Below, piece after piece: positions 2,002-33,403 of a stretch of DNA of 64,000 nucleotides (position 1 is the stretch's first letter; each line of letters opens with the position of its first letter). Both the position numbers and the translations under genes were made by a program. The stretch is from positions 62,001 to 126,000 of IMG/VR virus record IMGVR_UViG_3300028883_000032, one strand, 5' to 3'. The notes beneath the pieces are model-generated. The model had not been told where the DNA came from, did not search any database, and saw only the letters and a program-made list of their open reading frames with translations.

Positions 2002-2077
2002 AGTAACTTGGCCTATTACTGGCCTGTTGATTGGGCCATTCAGGAAGGTTGGCAGAGTGGTTTATTGCATCGGTCTT

Positions 2078-2744
2078 GAAAAACCACTTGATTTTTATAC
2101 CGCTGGTTGTTATATTATATAAACAACCAAGAGTATATTATGCACACTTGTAAACACTGCAAAAAAGAACTGGCTAACCCAAAACATCAGTACTGTTCTA
2201 ACCAATGTCAAGCTAATTATTTACGACAACGTAAAGTCGCCGCTTGGTTACGTGGGGAACATAATGGAATGAGGGGAAAAACTGGTACTGCTAAATGGAT
2301 TAAATGGTATTTGATTAATAAGTTTGGGGAAAAGTGTAGTAATTGTGGTTGGTCTGAAATAAACCCATTTACTGGCAACATACCTATTGAACTTAATCAT
2401 ATTGATGGGGATTTTACCAATAATAACGAAGCCAATTTAGAGCTTTTATGTCCCAACTGCCATTCACTAACTAACAGTTACAAGGGTGCAAACAAGAAAA
2501 AAGGCAGGCCTAGATCAAAGTATTACCGAGGTCTGTAAAATCGAGCAATACTAAAGAAATTTATTATTGCACTAGCCCTCAAATTCAGGGAAACCTCAGC
2601 ATGTAGAGATGGTGGTAATCCTGAGCTAAACCTATATGTAGGAAAGTGCAGAGACTTGACGGGGGCGGCCTAAGTTTAACAAATAAGGCAGAGAGAAAGT
2701 CCAGACCACAAACTAAACAGGCAGTGAAAACTGTAGATGGTAAG
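2078..2744 (+). mobile_element. Group I (IC3-like) self-splicing intron with homing endonuclease ORF
   Basis: Core elements AAATTCAGGGAAACC (2581), AATCCTGAGC (2617), GTGCAGAGACT (2646), GAGAGAAAGTCC (2691); P9 CAGT-GAAA-ACTG; follows a U and ends in G. Confidence 0.92.
2140..2538 (+). CDS. Intron-encoded HNH homing endonuclease with N-terminal zinc finger
   Basis: CKHC..YCSNQC, CSNC..ELNHIDGDFTNNNEANLELLCPNCHS (HNH motif). Confidence 0.9.
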   Translation: MHTCKHCKKELANPKHQYCSNQCQANYLRQRKVAAWLRGEHNGMRGKTGTAKWIKWYLINKFGEKCSNCGWSEINPFTGNIPIELNHIDGDFTNNNEANLELLCPNCHSLTNSYKGANKKKGRPRSKYYRGL

Positions 2745-2830
2745 GAAAACCGACGAGGCCTAAAAACCTCCCAGGGTTCGAATCCCTGACCTTCCTCCAC
2801 AAAACGACAAAATAAGAATCGGAGAGACAG

Positions 2831-3127
2831 ATGAAATTAGTAATTGGAAAAATTATTGACTATTCCGCCAAATTTTCTGATGGCAGCAGCATTAGCGGGC
2901 AGGTTATAGTACCCACTAATGATTCCTATCCAACGTATTACGAGAGAGTACTTGAGATTTTGAGAACCGGTAAATGCGGAGCAAAAATGGATGACATAAA
3001 CACATTACAAGTGGGTTACAGGAAATATACTGAATTTGCTATACACCCAAGTGTGTTTGATACACTGCCTTCTGCTTTACCAAAGACTAGAAAACATAAA
3101 GAATGTTCGGCTGATGGCCATGTTTAG
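2831..3127 (+). CDS. hypothetical protein
   Basis: GGAGAG SD, ORF in operon. Confidence 0.6.
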   Translation: MKLVIGKIIDYSAKFSDGSSISGQVIVPTNDSYPTYYERVLEILRTGKCGAKMDDINTLQVGYRKYTEFAIHPSVFDTLPSALPKTRKHKECSADGHV

Positions 3128-3797
3128 AAAATATGAAAAAACATTTAGATTGCCATCCGTTTTATTCGAGACTGGAAAGCGCGAATTATCTTCGGCTGAT
3201 CAGAAAAAACTACTTAATGGAAAAATTACTGTAGAAGAAAAAATTGATGGGGCTAATGTCGGAATAATAGGAACAAAGCCTGGAGAAGTATTTCGTACGC
3301 AAAAGCGGGGTTCTTTGGTGGGACCATCCGAACATGAGCAATTTAACAGATTTAAAGCTTGGACTGTGGGTCACGCAGATGACTTTAATAGTTTGCCAAA
3401 AGGAATTATAATTTATGGCGAATTTATGTGGGCGACACACCACATATTTTATAATAGCTTACCAGATTGGTTTATATGTTTTGATATCTGGGACAACTGT
3501 GAATATGTCTCACGTTTAGAGAAAGAAGAATGGTGCCAACAGTTAAATCTACAGTGTGTTCCCTTGATTTATGAAGGACCCGTTGCTTCAATAACCGAGT
3601 TGTTAGATTTGTTACCTGGAAAATCCGAATACAGCTCTGACCAAGAAAAAGAGGGCATAGTTGTAAAAAACTATAAAAAACAAATGCGTGCAAAACTTGT
3701 TAGGCCTAATTTCATAAAAGAGGTTAATGAAGATGGCACACATTGGATGACTAAATGGGATCCTAGAAAAGTTAATAAACTGCAAATGGGAGAATAA
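3114..3797 (+). CDS. RNA ligase (Rnl2-like nucleotidyltransferase)
   Basis: EEKIDGAN, YGEF, FDIW, EGIVVK, RAKLV motifs; no OB fold. Confidence 0.85.
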   Translation: MAMFRKYEKTFRLPSVLFETGKRELSSADQKKLLNGKITVEEKIDGANVGIIGTKPGEVFRTQKRGSLVGPSEHEQFNRFKAWTVGHADDFNSLPKGIIIYGEFMWATHHIFYNSLPDWFICFDIWDNCEYVSRLEKEEWCQQLNLQCVPLIYEGPVASITELLDLLPGKSEYSSDQEKEGIVVKNYKKQMRAKLVRPNFIKEVNEDGTHWMTKWDPRKVNKLQMGE

Positions 3798-4428: not shown

Positions 4429-4503
4429 GCTGGCGTAGCTAAGTTGGTTAAGGCGTCGGTCTGCAAAACCGTTCAATCGTGGGTTCGAATCCCACCGCTA
4501 GCT
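4429..4503 (+). tRNA. tRNA-Cys(GCA), CCA not encoded
   Basis: GCTGGCG/CGCTAGC acceptor, loop CT-GCA-AA, GTGGG-TTCGAAT-CCCAC T arm, U73 discriminator. Confidence 0.92.
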
Positions 4504-4524
4504 CTTTTAACAGGATAATAAAAA

Positions 4525-4809
4525 ATGGAACTTTTACATTTATCTGATGGTAAAACACTTGTTGTAAAACAAGTATTAAAACATGGTCCTCCTGAAGGAT
4601 TTGAGTATAATTTAGACTACCTAACACGTTCCGGCTACGAAGTTATTAAAATGCCTAATGGAATTGAAGTGATTGGAGAAATGGTAATAGATGCAAAATT
4701 TAAGGAACTTGATAATAGGAGATATTCACGGACGTTACGACTTAATGATGGACGTACTAAAACGTTGCCACTACGACCCTACGAAGGACCGTCTGATATG
4801 TCTTGGTGA
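4525..4809 (+). CDS. hypothetical protein (3' end overlaps phosphatase)
   Basis: AGGA SD; 119 nt overlap with next gene. Confidence 0.5.
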   Translation: MELLHLSDGKTLVVKQVLKHGPPEGFEYNLDYLTRSGYEVIKMPNGIEVIGEMVIDAKFKELDNRRYSRTLRLNDGRTKTLPLRPYEGPSDMSW

Positions 4810-5452
4810 CTTTGTAGATGGCTCCGAGAGAGTGAAAGATTGTTTAGAGTATCTATCGGAACAACCGAACATAGAACCAATATTTGGTAATCATGATAAA
4901 TGGTTCTTGGATTGGGTTCAAACGGGAGAAGACCCTGACCCGTGGTGGTTATATAACGGAGGTCCTGTAACTCTCAAAAGCTATAATTACTATGCAGGTA
5001 ATGCAAGATCAGAACAAGCGAAATATGAGTGCGCAATGCTTAGGTATTGTCCAGACTCCCGAATACCTAGAAAACATGTTGAATTTATTCGAAATGCCCG
5101 TTTATACTATGAAACAGATAATTGGGTTGCTATGCATGGAGGGTTTAGGCCCGAAGTGGGGTTCAAGAAAGAGAATCCTGAAAACATAATGTGGGACCGT
5201 GATCTATTTTATCAGCATTGGCAAAAATTGCCAAAAGATCACAAATTAGTAATCGTAGGCCATACGCCCACGATGGCTGTTACTGGAATTCCAGAACCTA
5301 TATTTAGATATAAGACATTTGGCAAAGACAAAAAGCTTATGTTAATAAATATAGACACTGGTGGAAAAATTGGGAGTGCTTTGTGTGTACTTAATCCAGA
5401 CACACTAGAATGGTGGACTAGTAAAAAAGAGACAAATCCGAAAAACTGGTAA
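4691..5452 (+). CDS. Calcineurin-like metallophosphoesterase (Ser/Thr phosphatase family)
   Basis: GDIHG, GDFVDG, GNHD, HGG, GHTP, DTG motifs. Confidence 0.92.
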   Translation: MQNLRNLIIGDIHGRYDLMMDVLKRCHYDPTKDRLICLGDFVDGSERVKDCLEYLSEQPNIEPIFGNHDKWFLDWVQTGEDPDPWWLYNGGPVTLKSYNYYAGNARSEQAKYECAMLRYCPDSRIPRKHVEFIRNARLYYETDNWVAMHGGFRPEVGFKKENPENIMWDRDLFYQHWQKLPKDHKLVIVGHTPTMAVTGIPEPIFRYKTFGKDKKLMLINIDTGGKIGSALCVLNPDTLEWWTSKKETNPKNW

Positions 5453-31789: not shown

Positions 31790-33403
31790 TTATGAAATAT
31801 AACTTACTGGGGTTTCACACATTTCGCAAATAGCTGTAGCAAAAATAAGTGAATGTACTGTGTCATCTGGATCAGAATTAGTATATTGTAGTTTATTATG
31901 ATCTTCATCATAGTCTGCTACAATAGCCATTAAATCATCAGCAAATGGTGTTTTAAACTGATCGTAGTGTGGAAAAACATATTGTTTAGTTTTTACTCTA
32001 TGATAAAAATTAGAAATCGCCTTGTTACGATTTACCATCCAATGCATGGCCTTACCTTGCCACTTATAATCCTCTTTTAAAGTGGCAGAATGTAGATATT
32101 CTGTTACTGCGTAACGGCCAAGACGCCTGCGTAATTCTGCGTTGGAGGCTTCCCCCATGCCACGATCTGCCCCTATTCGTTCAACTTCCCACGCTTTGGC
32201 TATTTTTGGTATTTCGTCATGAATGTATTCAAAATTGGCGTATTTGCCTTCAAACCTACGTATATATTTAACAACAAACCTGTCGTATTCATCTCGTTGT
32301 ATGACACTAACCACGGTATAGCTGTTATCGCTGTTGGCGGGACCCCAGTCGATTCCCATGTAACTTGGTCTGGGTTTGTGTTTTAAAGTTATGGCTCCAG
32401 GTTGTCGGTAGTCTGGCATAATATACCCAGGATCACAAGCTGCCTTAATTTGTTCAGGGGTGATAAGAACAACACCATCATCGTACTCAAGACCAAGTAT
32501 TTCGTTATAAAAGGTTGCTCTTGACTCTGTTTCGTATTTATAAACAATGTCTTGCTCCCAATCAATCCATGGTGCCCCATAGAATTGCAGCTGAGATATC
32601 CTAAACCCTTCAACAAGATTTGCTCGAGATCGAGCAGACTGATTAGTGCTTATCCATGACCCAATTCGTGGATTAAGAATCTTCCCACAATACTTACATA
32701 TTAACGCGTGAAGTCCTATATTCTTTTCTGTTAGAATATTATGTTTTCCACAGTGTCCACACTCCACAGCCCACTCATTCATGGTGGAAGAAAACCACCA
32801 TTTCGCCAAGGTACCACGTTTTCTTTTAGGCGTGCCTGTATAATAATTCCATTTATACAAAGAACGGTGCATAGCTTGATTAATAATTTCTATGCTGTCT
32901 TGCAGAAGATCCTGAGCCTCATCGTAACAAATCATATCAGCAGAAAGGCCACGAAGTCTGTCAGGACTTTGTAACGCATAGCGCAAGTATATTTTTGCGC
33001 CATTTACAAGAGTTTTGTTAAATACGTTATTTTGTAAATTTCTATTCCACCAATACTTCTTTATAAGGGGAGACTCTTCAAGTATAGGCGTAAAGCGATC
33101 GTACGAAAATATTTTTGTTTGGTCGACTGACGGAGAAACATACACTGTACGAAATCCCATCGGTCTGGCATCTTTGCCGCCTCGTTCCCTTGGCAACAAG
33201 GCGCTATTAGCAAATATAATATTTGCTAGAGTTGTGCTTTTTACAACCTGTCGTGCTGTTTTTAATACTATGACATTCGCTGGGTCTATATTATATATAG
33301 GCCGCATATGTGGATAGGCATCCAAACTATACGGCATTCCATTCAAATAAACATACGATTCAACAAATTCACTTTTTGTAAAATTAAGCGGTGCGTTCTT
33401 CAT
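31790..33403 (-). CDS. Terminase large subunit (GpA-like ATPase plus RNase H-like nuclease)
   Basis: KTARQVVKST (Walker A variant), RGLSADMICYDEAQD (Walker B), YMGIDWG, IGADRGMG, PDDTVHSL. Confidence 0.9.
   Translation of the reverse strand: MKNAPLNFTKSEFVESYVYLNGMPYSLDAYPHMRPIYNIDPANVIVLKTARQVVKSTTLANIIFANSALLPRERGGKDARPMGFRTVYVSPSVDQTKIFSYDRFTPILEESPLIKKYWWNRNLQNNVFNKTLVNGAKIYLRYALQSPDRLRGLSADMICYDEAQDLLQDSIEIINQAMHRSLYKWNYYTGTPKRKRGTLAKWWFSSTMNEWAVECGHCGKHNILTEKNIGLHALICKYCGKILNPRIGSWISTNQSARSRANLVEGFRISQLQFYGAPWIDWEQDIVYKYETESRATFYNEILGLEYDDGVVLITPEQIKAACDPGYIMPDYRQPGAITLKHKPRPSYMGIDWGPANSDNSYTVVSVIQRDEYDRFVVKYIRRFEGKYANFEYIHDEIPKIAKAWEVERIGADRGMGEASNAELRRRLGRYAVTEYLHSATLKEDYKWQGKAMHWMVNRNKAISNFYHRVKTKQYVFPHYDQFKTPFADDLMAIVADYDEDHNKLQYTNSDPDDTVHSLIFATAICEMCETPVSYIS

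What the first reader, a model, noticed from the sequence alone, without database searches (positions are those of the whole stretch)
2043..2799. Phage tRNA-Ser(UGA) split in the anticodon by a mobile IC3 group I intron carrying an HNH endonuclease
Seen: a complete tRNA-Ser is restored by joining 2077 to 2745; the intron has trnL-type P/Q/R/S elements and an intact HNH ORF. GAGGTC (2528-2533), in the last codons of the HNH gene, can pair with the exon end GGTCTT with the required U-G pair, which would place the ORF in the P1 loop. Established: cyanobacterial and plastid tRNA-Leu(UAA) IC3 introns also sit between positions 34 and 35, and the Synechocystis tRNA-fMet intron encodes I-Ssp6803I. 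Inference: a Ser(UGA) insertion site with an HNH homing enzyme in a phage is unusual; the enzyme may also cut intronless tRNA genes of the host or competing phages.
Basis: partly seen in the sequence, partly recalled or inferred. Interest (0 to 1): 0.75.

Follow-up and report, generated by a model that had tools for sequence, protein, structure and literature searches.

The report
Phage tRNA-Ser intron carrying HNH endonuclease
The only tRNA-Ser(UGA) gene of an uncultivated 207-kb marine-sediment phage is split in its anticodon by an apparently self-splicing group I intron that carries a nuclease gene, whose closest relatives sit as stand-alone genes beside uninterrupted tRNA-Ser genes in other phages.

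Summary
Joining 2077 to 2745 gives a 90-nt tRNA-Ser(UGA). The 667-nt insert (2078-2744) ends in a complete group I ribozyme core and holds an intact 132-aa HNH gene (2140-2538).

One detail changes. That hexamer is only the conserved Arg-Gly-Leu codons. The ORF still lies in the P1 loop.

The context is the main result:
- The ribozyme belongs to a large class of anticodon-loop introns found in bacteria and in many uncultivated phages.
- A Gammaproteobacteria chromosome carries an ORF-less intron at the same tRNA-Ser(UGA) site.
- The HNH belongs to a family of over 500 unnamed proteins tied to phage tRNA arrays.
- Its own clade is otherwise free-standing and abuts intact tRNA-Ser(UGA) genes.
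- A sister group at tRNA-Thr(UGU) shows both other layouts: free-standing beside an ORF-less intron, and inside the intron.

Most likely this is a mobile intron formed when a tRNA-Ser-specific free-standing HNH cassette entered a resident intron. Splicing, cleavage and homing are inferred, not shown. No RNA data were available. No published report of group I introns in phage tRNA genes was found.

The parts
2043..2077 (+). 5' exon of tRNA-Ser(UGA): acceptor 5' strand, D arm, anticodon stem 5' strand, and C32-U33-U34
   Evidence: The 5' half matches annotated phage tRNA-Ser genes.
2078..2744 (+). Group I intron, 667 nt, inserted between U34 and G35
2078..2139 (+). Left part of the P1 loop, which is also the leader of the HNH cassette. 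It begins GAAAAACC, repeating the start of the 3' exon (GAAAACC), and is loosely similar to the leaders of free-standing homologs.
2088..2116 (+). Sigma-70-like -35/-10 pair (TTGATT, 17 nt, TATATT). It is no more than chance would give in this region.
   Evidence: 3 sites found against 2.8 expected
2104..2129 (+). Hairpin just ahead of the ORF, overlapping the likely ribosome-binding site (AAGAG)
   Evidence: -13 kcal/mol, z = -3.0
2140..2538 (+). HNH endonuclease gene, 132 aa. It has an N-terminal four-Cys ribbon, an HNH core with a CxxC...CxxC zinc site, and a C-terminal GRPRSKYYRGL tail.
2528..2533 (+). It is most likely only the codons for Arg-Gly-Leu.
2543..2545 (+). Internal guide sequence GAG. 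P1 is C2075-U2076-U2077 paired with G2545-A2544-G2543, giving a U.G wobble at the splice site.
2546..2569 (+). P2 hairpin: 9 pairs and one mismatch, with a GAAA loop at 2556-2559
2575..2580 (+). P3 5' strand (GCCCUC), pairing with 2661-2666 (GGGGGC)
   Evidence: Compensatory changes against L235.
2585..2624 (+). P4 (2585-2590 / 2619-2624) enclosing P5
2625..2647 (+). P6
2651..2657 (+). P7 5' strand with bulged A2652. It pairs with 2697-2702 and forms the guanosine-binding helix.
   Evidence: the last pair covaries UA/AU/GC/CG
2661..2666 (+). P3 3' strand
2667..2690 (+). P8
2697..2702 (+). P7 3' strand
2705..2741 (+). P9.0 (2705-2709 / 2736-2741) enclosing P9 (2721-2725 / 2730-2734, GAAA loop)
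2744..2744 (+). Terminal G of the intron (omega-G), in the family-wide ending GGTAAG
2745..2799 (+). 3' exon: G35-A36, the rest of the anticodon arm, variable arm, T arm, acceptor 3' strand, U73 and CCA
   Evidence: Matches an annotated phage tRNA-Ser.

Best explanation
The phage's only tRNA-Ser(UGA) gene is interrupted between U34 and G35 by a compact group I intron of the bacterial tRNA-anticodon-loop type. The precursor is expected to fold so that C32-U33-U34 pairs with GAG 2543-2545 to form P1. Guanosine-initiated self-splicing would then release a 90-nt tRNA.

The roughly 465-nt P1 loop holds a separate cassette: a leader, a hairpin and a 132-aa HNH endonuclease gene. The enzyme most likely recognises and cuts DNA of intronless tRNA-Ser(UGA) genes around the anticodon arm, in co-infecting phages and possibly in hosts. 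Repair from the intron-bearing copy would spread the intron and the ORF together. The resident gene is protected because the intron splits the target.

The element most likely arose when a free-standing, tRNA-Ser-associated HNH cassette recombined into an ORF-less tRNA-Ser(UGA) intron like the one in a Gammaproteobacteria chromosome.

Shown here: tRNA restoration, ribozyme homology and covariation, the HNH fold, and the link between HNH clade and tRNA identity. Inferred: splicing, target specificity, homing, and the direction of evolution.
For: tRNA and boundaries.

Ribozyme:
- Rfam E 2.6e-11; own model 92.6 bits.
- RNAalifold on nine introns including this one gives 46 pairs, 34 with compensatory changes, covering P2-P6, P8, P9.0 and P9.
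- Across 91 family members, 97.6% of cells pair against 79% when shuffled and about 30% when slid, and 15 of 19 pairs show compensatory changes.
- The single-sequence centroid fold reproduces P2, P3, P4, P6, P8, P9.0 and P9.

Guide sequence: GAG sits 43 nt before P4, as in relatives. The bacterial same-site intron L235 shares AAUCGAGC and the ending GUAGAUGGUAAG|GAAAACC.

Need for splicing: no second tRNA-Ser(UGA) exists in the genome.

HNH: intact; PHROG HNH 2e-17; 507 homologs; model pLDDT 82.6; most of the 50 listed Foldseek PDB hits, including the top eight, are HNH nucleases, the main exception being DotN/IcmJ.

Target link:
- The window's HNH lies in a well-supported clade (99/93) of 12.
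- Ten of the other 11 members are free-standing and lie next to a tRNA with a UGA anticodon: 0-7 nt after the HNH stop codon in eight, just downstream in L009, and 67 nt upstream in L004.
- The eleventh, L058, lies beside tRNA-Ser(GCU) on the opposite strand.
- The nearest homologs, at 70-71% identity, show the same layout.

Targets exist: the exact 20-nt intronless junction occurs in 17 viral contigs. An intronless tRNA-Ser(UGA) is present in the same sample.

Capture model:
- tRNA-Thr(UGU) relatives show an ORF-less intron with a free-standing HNH downstream in 14 loci, and the HNH inside the intron in 6 loci. Five of the six in-intron HNHs nest beside a free-standing one; the sixth (L061) groups elsewhere.
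- In L005 and L056 a tRNA 5'-half remnant is joined to the HNH leader at the same GGTCTT point.
Against: - There is no RNA evidence: no RNA run could be listed.
- The Rfam score is just under the gathering score (49.2 against 50).
- P1 would have only 3 pairs and must form across about 465 nt. A possible loop-closing helix (2090-2095 / 2537-2542) is no better than chance (356 of 2000 shuffles).
- Pfam HNH models score below their cut-offs.
- No second copy of this exact intron-plus-HNH element was found, so presence/absence among close relatives could not be tested.
- The tree does not settle the direction of evolution: the window's HNH is sister to, not nested in, the free-standing tRNA-Ser clade.
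Confidence: 0.78

Rival explanations
1. One reading: GAGGUC 2528-2533, inside the last HNH codons, is the guide sequence and forms a 6-bp P1 with G29-U34 of the exon.
For: The pairing is possible and includes the U.G wobble at the splice site. The Rfam alignment begins at 2523.
Against: - Family members use a 3-nt guide followed by C or U and then directly by P2.
- The bacterial same-site intron aligns at AAUCGAGC.
- GAGGTC also occurs in a free-standing homolog without any intron, and other homologs use different codons for the same Arg-Gly-Leu.
- Three of the six pairs would be wobbles, and the pairing would have to unwind the anticodon stem.
Confidence: 0.1
2. A dead element: the tRNA gene was inactivated by the insertion, and the ribozyme, the ORF, or both no longer work.
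For: No RNA data are available. The large P1-loop insert could hinder folding. The Rfam score is marginally under the gathering score.
Against: - Every helix of the consensus core is intact in this copy.
- The exons give a flawless tRNA.
- The ORF is full length with all residues invariant in the 22-sequence alignment.
- It is the genome's only tRNA-Ser(UGA).
- The genome's second tRNA intron is equally intact.
Confidence: 0.1
3. The HNH is not primarily a homing enzyme for this intron site. It acts on tRNA arrays more generally, for example promoting recombination or amplification of tRNA loci as reported for T4/T6 SegB, or cutting several tRNA genes. Its place in the intron would then be incidental.
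For: - The family sits in tRNA arrays next to many different tRNAs.
- T4 SegB cuts several tRNA genes through the T-arm motif (PMC2330249).
- A 2026 paper (PMC13096335) reports SegB-driven segmental amplification of anti-defence loci; only its abstract was seen.
Against: - HNH clades track tRNA identity: a Ser(UGA) clade and a Thr(UGU)/intron clade.
- In the Thr group the same enzyme lineage sits beside or inside an intron at that tRNA's anticodon. This is the pattern expected of site-specific homing.
Confidence: 0.15
4. The reverse history: the intron-borne HNH is ancestral, and the free-standing copies beside intact tRNA-Ser genes arose when the ribozyme and 3' exon were replaced by a whole tRNA gene.
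For: - Remnant 5' halves upstream of free-standing copies end at the intron insertion point.
- The window's HNH branches near the base of the Ser clade.
Against: - The sequence after GGTCTT, in the remnants and in the window alike, continues like the rest of the anticodon loop (GAAAA). The ORF-less intron L235 starts differently. This suggests the cassette first entered an intronless gene.
- Ten of the 11 other clade members, and both nearest homologs, are intron-free beside a UGA-anticodon tRNA.
Confidence: 0.25

Closest known systems
Bacterial and plastid tRNA group I introns: cyanobacterial tRNA-Leu(UAA), Azoarcus tRNA-Ile(CAU), Agrobacterium tRNA-Arg(CCU). Subgroup IC3 by established knowledge.
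   Same: Inserted in the anticodon loop; for tRNA-Leu(UAA), also between positions 34 and 35. The core is compact at about 200-230 nt, P1 is very short, L2 and L9 are GAAA loops, and there is no P5abc. The Azoarcus intron is 205 nt and lies in the anticodon loop (PMC13168695).
   Different: The host gene is a phage tRNA-Ser(UGA). The P1 loop carries a 450-nt ORF cassette. A formal IC3 classification was not run.
Synechocystis PCC 6803 tRNA-fMet intron encoding I-Ssp6803I (Bonocora & Shub 2001, cited in PMC3984707)
   Same: [quoted passage not shown]
   Different: I-Ssp6803I is not an HNH enzyme; by my own knowledge it belongs to the PD-(D/E)XK class. That intron is in a cyanobacterial chromosome, not a phage, and in a different tRNA.
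Collaborative homing and the proposed route to mobile introns: the cyanophage psbA intron with free-standing F-CphI, and the T3/T7-like phages (Zeng, Bonocora & Shub 2009; summarised in PMC3984707)
   Same: A free-standing endonuclease and an ORF-less intron converge on one site, and recombination then places the ORF inside the intron. All three layouts are seen here at tRNA genes.
   Different: The targets are tRNA genes rather than protein-coding genes. The enzyme family is different. Nothing here has been tested experimentally.
Free-standing homing endonucleases in phage tRNA clusters: T4 SegB (GIY-YIG) and T5 F-TflI/II/IV (PMC2330249)
   Same: Endonuclease genes embedded in phage tRNA arrays. 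SegB cuts inside tRNA genes and drives inheritance of the region.
   Different: SegB is a GIY-YIG enzyme that recognises the T-arm motif shared by many tRNAs, and no intron is involved. Here the enzyme is an HNH family whose clades follow single tRNA identities.
HNH endonucleases of phage group I introns (for example I-HmuI of SPO1 and I-TevIII, from my own knowledge; I-PfoP3I, PMC3428280)
   Same: An HNH enzyme encoded inside a phage group I intron.
   Different: Those introns interrupt protein-coding genes. This 132-aa protein has no close solved relative by sequence.

Membership tests
Group I intron (Rfam RF00028) | Conserved catalytic core: P3-P8 with the P7 guanosine-binding helix, and P4-P6 | tested here: met
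   Rfam gives 49.2 bits, E 2.6e-11, which is 0.8 bit under the gathering score. The own family model gives 92.6 bits. All helices are present in this copy, with covariation across the family.
Group I intron (Rfam RF00028) | A U before the 5' splice site paired to a G of the guide sequence, and a G as the last intron base | tested here: met
   U2077 can pair with G2543, and G2744 is the terminal G. Of the six boundary pairs that give the same product, this is the only one that meets both rules.
Group I intron (Rfam RF00028) | Guanosine-dependent self-splicing | not testable with these tools
   No RNA run could be listed. The DNA contigs of the source run show only the intron-bearing form.
tRNA anticodon-loop introns (IC3 type) | Inserted in the anticodon loop of a tRNA gene, with a short P1 made from loop bases | tested here: met
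   The intron lies between U34 and G35, and P1 is CUU/GAG. Most of the resolved phage tRNA introns, and the most frequent bacterial ones, share this layout.
tRNA anticodon-loop introns (IC3 type) | Compact core with P2 and P9 capped by GNRA loops and no P5abc extension | tested here: met
   L2 is GAAA at 2556-2559 and L9 is GAAA at 2726-2729. The core from guide sequence to end is 202 nt.
tRNA anticodon-loop introns (IC3 type) | Formal assignment to subgroup IC3 by a subgroup-specific model | not tested
   No subgroup models were available. The assignment rests on architecture and on the type of host gene.
HNH endonuclease | A beta-beta-alpha metal finger with catalytic His, Asn and His, plus a four-Cys zinc site | tested here: met
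   H87, N99, H108, C66, C69, C104 and C107 are invariant in 22 homologs. PHROG HNH families score 2e-17 to 1e-14. Most of the 50 listed structure matches, including the top eight, are HNH nucleases. Pfam HNH and HNH_3 score only 16 bits, below their cut-offs.
Homing endonuclease of a mobile intron | Cuts the intronless allele at or near the intron insertion site | not testable with these tools
   Only indirect support: the clade-wide association with tRNA-Ser(UGA) genes.
Homing endonuclease of a mobile intron | Presence/absence polymorphism of ORF and intron among related genomes | tested here: inconclusive
   An ORF-less same-site intron exists in a bacterium, intronless alleles exist in 17 viral contigs, and free-standing homologs exist. 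No close relative of this phage carries the locus.
I-Ssp6803I-type tRNA-intron endonuclease | Sequence or fold relation to I-Ssp6803I | tested here: not met
   The protein is an HNH enzyme. I-Ssp6803I does not appear among the PDB sequence hits at E up to 1 or among the 50 listed structure hits.

The most novel reading that the evidence does not exclude
This locus is one visible end of an undescribed, widespread system. A family of small HNH homing endonucleases is specialised on phage tRNA genes, and its clades are keyed to single tRNA identities: Ser(UGA), Thr(UGU) and others. These enzymes have entered anticodon-loop group I introns at least twice: at tRNA-Ser(UGA) in this window and at tRNA-Thr(UGU).

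If so, phages do carry tRNA introns, contrary to the published generalisation. tRNA genes would then offer a natural series of all the stages by which a ribozyme and a nuclease gene become a mobile intron.
Probability: 0.55. Interest if true: 0.75.

Novelty: new variant of a known kind. Interest (0 to 1): 0.62.

Why it matters
1. A 2014 review states that all phage group I introns known then lie in protein-coding genes despite the many phage tRNA genes (PMC3984707). I found no later report to the contrary. This locus, a second one in the same genome, and dozens in viral and metagenomic contigs show that the rule does not hold.

2. The same HNH lineage occurs in three layouts: free-standing beside an intact tRNA, free-standing beside an ORF-less intron, and inside the intron. 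Together they form a comparative series for testing the 'collaborative homing then capture' route to mobile introns.

3. The enzymes are small (about 132 aa) and probably recognise tRNA anticodon-arm DNA. That makes them easy to assay and possibly useful.

4. Standard tRNA finders miss or mis-name these genes. Default ARAGORN and Rfam missed both in this genome, and intron-mode ARAGORN called the second one 'SeC'. Phage tRNA repertoires and codon-usage inferences are therefore undercounted.

Tried and rejected
- ARAGORN's intron-mode anticodon calls were wrong for several loci. L037 was called 'Ser' but is Lys(UUU). The genome's second intron host was called 'SeC' but is Leu(UAG). I replaced these calls with an enumeration of U|...G| boundaries that restore a 5-bp anticodon stem and a tRNA.
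I used a model of the 3' half instead.
- A helix that might close the ORF-bearing P1 loop (2090-2095 / 2537-2542) is no better than shuffles: 356 of 2000 for this intron, and 74, 912 and 864 of 2000 for the three other introns with P1-loop inserts. It is not claimed.
- The sigma-70-like promoter at 2088-2116 is not above chance.
- Local alignment of the tRNA 5' half against the region upstream of free-standing HNH genes was not significant by score. The remnant is convincing by eye only in L056 and L005. A semi-global rerun was mis-set and gave no usable statistics.
- A search for near relatives of the phage through the neighbouring RNA ligase found four large contigs, but none has this intron or HNH at the syntenic place.
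- No RNA runs could be listed. The source DNA run shows a single form of the locus.
- No informative match to a solved structure by sequence.
- The antisense ORF of the second intron has no Pfam family.
- L035 has five intron-core hits that are not in tRNA genes.
Full report
**1. Where the window lies.** The window is bases 62001-126000 of a 206,856-bp virus record rated complete by CheckV. It is contig Ga0272443_10000067. The only public run that holds it is a marine sediment metagenome. Its large terminase (window 31790-33403, minus strand) is at most 28.5% identical to that of any isolated phage. This is therefore an uncultivated jumbo-size phage of unknown host, with 39.6% G+C.

**2. The observation.** Default ARAGORN and Rfam at gathering score see nothing at 2043-2799.
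- With introns allowed, ARAGORN reports tRNA-Ser(tga) at genome 64043-64799 with a 667-nt intron.
- Joining 2043-2077 to 2745-2799 gives a 90-nt class II tRNA with perfect acceptor, anticodon and T stems, anticodon UGA, U73 and CCA.
- The genome's other serine tRNA (GCU) also ends U73-CCA.
- Both halves match annotated phage tRNA-Ser genes.
- The intron and the 3' exon both begin GAAAA, so six boundary pairs give the same product. Only 2077|2078 and 2744|2745 satisfy the group I rules (U before the 5' site, G at the intron's end), and they match the family alignment.
- There is no second tRNA-Ser(UGA) in the genome.

**3. The ribozyme.** Rfam Intron_gpI matches 2523-2721 at 49.2 bits, E 2.6e-11, just under the gathering score of 50.

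A pattern taken from the conserved P7/P3' and P7'/J9.0 strands, which are shared with a second intron of the same genome, retrieved two sets of loci:
- 24 viral contigs;

I enumerated splice boundaries that restore a tRNA. This places 16 of the 24 viral loci, plus the two introns of this genome, in tRNA anticodon loops. All but one of the 16 lie after C32-U33-U34. The host tRNAs are:

| tRNA | Loci |
|---|---|
| Leu(UAA) | L031, L033, L044, L053 |
| Arg(UCU) | L032, L043, L049, L052 |
| Lys(UUU) | L037, L040, L042, L050, L054 |
| Thr(UGU) | L039 |
| Ile(UAU) | L046 |
| Lys(CUU), intron after position 35 | L034 |
| Leu(UAG) | second intron of this genome |
| Ser(UGA) | this window only |

In bacteria the same tally, taking the shortest solution where several fit, gives Arg(UCU) 31, Asn(GUU) 25 (ambiguous with Lys(UUU)), Lys(UUU) 12, Leu(UAA) 10 and Arg(CCU) 7.

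Evidence for the fold:
- RNAalifold on nine introns including this one predicts 46 pairs, 34 with compensatory changes, for P2, P3, P4, P5, P6, P8, P9.0 and P9.
- P7 added by hand is invariant except for its last pair, which covaries.
- On 91 matches to a model of the 3' half, 97.6% of cells pair against 79% for shuffles and about 30% for slid partners, and 15 of 19 pairs show double changes. That alignment was fitted to the model, so it leans towards the structure.
- The single-sequence centroid fold of 2539-2750 reproduces P2, P3, P4, P6, P8, P9.0 and P9.

Window coordinates of each helix are given under 'parts'.

**4. Which guide sequence.** Where nothing is inserted in P1, the intron runs in this order: splice site, 8-13 nt, GAG, then C or U, P2 with a GAAA loop, and P4 about 42-43 nt after the GAG.
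- In the window the GAG with this spacing (43 nt) is 2543-2545, four bases after the stop codon.
- The bacterial same-site intron (L235) aligns there with AAUCGAGC.
- GAGGTC is what the codons for the family's conserved C-terminal Arg-Gly-Leu happen to spell. Free-standing homologs use AGG GGT TTA, CGA GGT TTA or AGA GGT TTA. One (L057) uses AGA GGT CTA, which spells the same hexamer with no intron present.

I therefore assign P1 as C32-U33-U34 paired with GAG 2543-2545. This is a 3-pair P1 of the kind known from tRNA introns. Either way the ORF lies in the P1 loop.

The P1 loop tolerates inserts elsewhere in the family: a 60-nt hairpin in L053, an HNH-like ORF in L031, and an antisense ORF in this genome's tRNA-Leu(UAG) intron.

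**5. The ORF.** ORF 2140-2538 encodes 132 aa.
- PHROG HNH families match at 2e-17 to 1e-14.
- Pfam HNH models score below their cut-offs.
- NCBIfam gives only weak hits to the HNH parts of IscB and ZorE.
- The protein database holds 507 homologs of 100-230 aa. The few source names among the 120 best listed are generic ('hypothetical protein') or doubtful automatic labels.
- A metagenome scan found at least 581 loci.
- Invariant residues are four N-terminal Cys, the His/Asn/His of the HNH motif, two CxxC pairs, and a C-terminal GRPR...YYRG tail.
- An AlphaFold model (pLDDT 82.6) matches mainly HNH nucleases in the PDB: ScoMcrA, PacI, EcoKMcrA, Cap5, Cas9 HNH and the GVE2 HNH. The main exception is DotN/IcmJ. 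E-values are modest, from 4e-3 upward.
- No informative sequence match to a solved structure was found.
- A hairpin at 2104-2129 (z = -3.0) overlaps the likely ribosome-binding site.
- A sigma-70-like site at 2088-2116 is not above chance.

**6. Where the relatives sit.** Of 85 other loci that carry a homolog, 30 have a tRNA gene starting from 14 nt before to 26 nt after the HNH stop codon, on the same strand.

In a maximum-likelihood tree the window's protein falls in a well-supported clade (99/93) of 12.

| Locus or loci | Layout beside the free-standing HNH |
|---|---|
| L005, L006, L007, L008, L056, L057, L059, L065 | intact tRNA-Ser(UGA) 0-7 nt downstream |
| L004 | intact tRNA-Ser(UGA) 67 nt upstream |
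| L009 | a tRNA-like gene with a UGA anticodon loop just downstream |
| L058 | tRNA-Ser(GCU) on the opposite strand |

- None of these has an intron.
- The two nearest homologs (70-71% identity) show the same layout.
- In L056 and L005 a copy of the tRNA's 5' half, ending at GGTCTT, precedes the HNH leader. The window's exon-intron junction lies at the same point, and the next bases (TGAAAAAA, against GAAAAACC in the window) look like the rest of the anticodon loop.
- The full tRNA that follows the HNH in L005 and L056 has a variant anticodon stem. That could make it resistant to cleavage; this is inference.

**7. A parallel series at tRNA-Thr(UGU).** The ribozyme model finds an intron in 21 of the 89 HNH loci searched. 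For the loci whose boundaries could be solved, the host is tRNA-Thr(UGU) with the intron after U36 and guide sequence GCA. L115 is the exception, with a tRNA-Met(CAU) solution.
- In 14 loci, several from human-gut assemblies, the intron is ORF-less (223-239 nt) and the HNH gene stands about 125 nt beyond the intron's end.
- In 6 loci the HNH lies inside the intron, and its 3' end runs into the P5'/P4'/P6 strands.
- Five of the six in-intron proteins form a group whose sister is a free-standing one (L078), inside the Thr/intron clade. The sixth (L061) groups elsewhere in that clade.

This is the layout predicted by the collaborative-homing route to mobile introns (PMC3984707).

**8. The same site in a bacterium.** L235 is a 3.33-Mb contig of a Gammaproteobacteria MAG. 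It carries a chromosomal tRNA-Ser(UGA) with an ORF-less 227-nt intron between positions 34 and 35. The two sequences are clearly homologous through P4, P7 and P9, with compensatory changes in P2 and P3.

**9. Targets.** The exact 20-nt intronless junction occurs in tRNA-Ser(UGA) genes of 17 viral contigs, none of which has the HNH. In the source run a low-depth contig carries an intronless tRNA-Ser(UGA) whose 5' half matches 36 of 40 bases.

**10. Interpretation.** The evidence supports a functional, probably mobile group I intron.

I favour capture of a free-standing, tRNA-Ser-specific cassette by a resident ORF-less intron. The reason is that the intron's first bases repeat exon sequence, as they do at the left edge of the free-standing cassettes. 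The tree does not decide the direction, and the reverse history keeps about a quarter of the weight.

Splicing, cleavage specificity and homing are untested. No RNA run could be listed, and the source DNA shows one form only.

**11. Literature.**
- The 2014 review says that all phage introns observed to that date are in protein-coding genes despite the many phage tRNA genes.
- Seven full-text searches and the follow-up reads found no report of a group I intron in a phage tRNA gene.
- Free-standing endonucleases in phage tRNA clusters are known: T4 SegB and T5 F-TflI/II/IV.
- The library is incomplete, so 'not found' does not mean 'not published'.

Noticed in passing
L001:980-1782 (genome 8824-9626, outside the window): A second tRNA intron in the same phage. 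tRNA-Leu(UAG), which ARAGORN mis-called 'SeC(tca)', is split after U34 by an 803-nt intron (Rfam 71 bits). Its P1 loop holds an ORF of about 177 aa on the opposite strand with no Pfam family.
   Followed up: partly
L003 (genome 146154-146467, outside the window): A third, weak Rfam group I match (21 bits, E 3e-4). My tRNA-intron model does not find it. It may be an intron of another type in a protein-coding gene.
   Followed up: no
genome 4202-4275, 162777-162851 and 150804-151167 (outside the window): The phage encodes a tRNA with anticodon CUA (amber-suppressor type, called 'Pyl'), a tRNA with a four-base anticodon call (ataa), and a tmRNA with tag GETPVLKAA. Altogether it has about 30 tRNA genes.
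   Followed up: no
window 3036-3797 and 4691-5452, with tRNA-Cys at 4429-4504: An RNA ligase homolog (PHROG 548, 2e-21) and a NinI-like metallophosphatase (1e-48) flank tRNA genes just downstream of the intron. This may be a tRNA-repair module of the kind phages use against anticodon nucleases.
   Followed up: no
L005, L006, L007, L056, L057, L059, L292 and about 20 further loci: In the free-standing members the HNH stop codon lies from 14 nt inside to 26 nt before the first base of a tRNA gene on the same strand. Processing of the tRNA's 5' end would therefore also define the 3' end of the HNH message.
   Followed up: partly
L259:2639-2727; also L292:1399-1482: These are class II, serine-like tRNAs with a long variable arm but anticodon UGU (threonine). 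One is at the place syntenic with the window's tRNA-Ser in a related large phage.
   Followed up: no
L035 (IMGVR_UViG_3300045971_000676), five sites between 3922 and 10119: There are five matches to the intron-core model within 6 kb of one viral contig. None restores a tRNA, and ARAGORN finds no tRNA genes in the locus. The same ribozyme class may also interrupt other genes.
   Followed up: partly
L066:1885-1911 and L113:1849-1875: Where the HNH sits inside the tRNA-Thr intron, its last codons are the ribozyme's own P5'/P4'/P6 strands (GGCAAUCCCGAGCUAGG). The usual GRPRSKYYRGL tail is missing.
   Followed up: no
window 2043-2082, in the source run: A 228-nt, low-depth contig from the same sample carries an intronless tRNA-Ser(UGA) whose 5' half matches 36 of 40 bases. 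It is a potential target living in the same community.
   Followed up: partly
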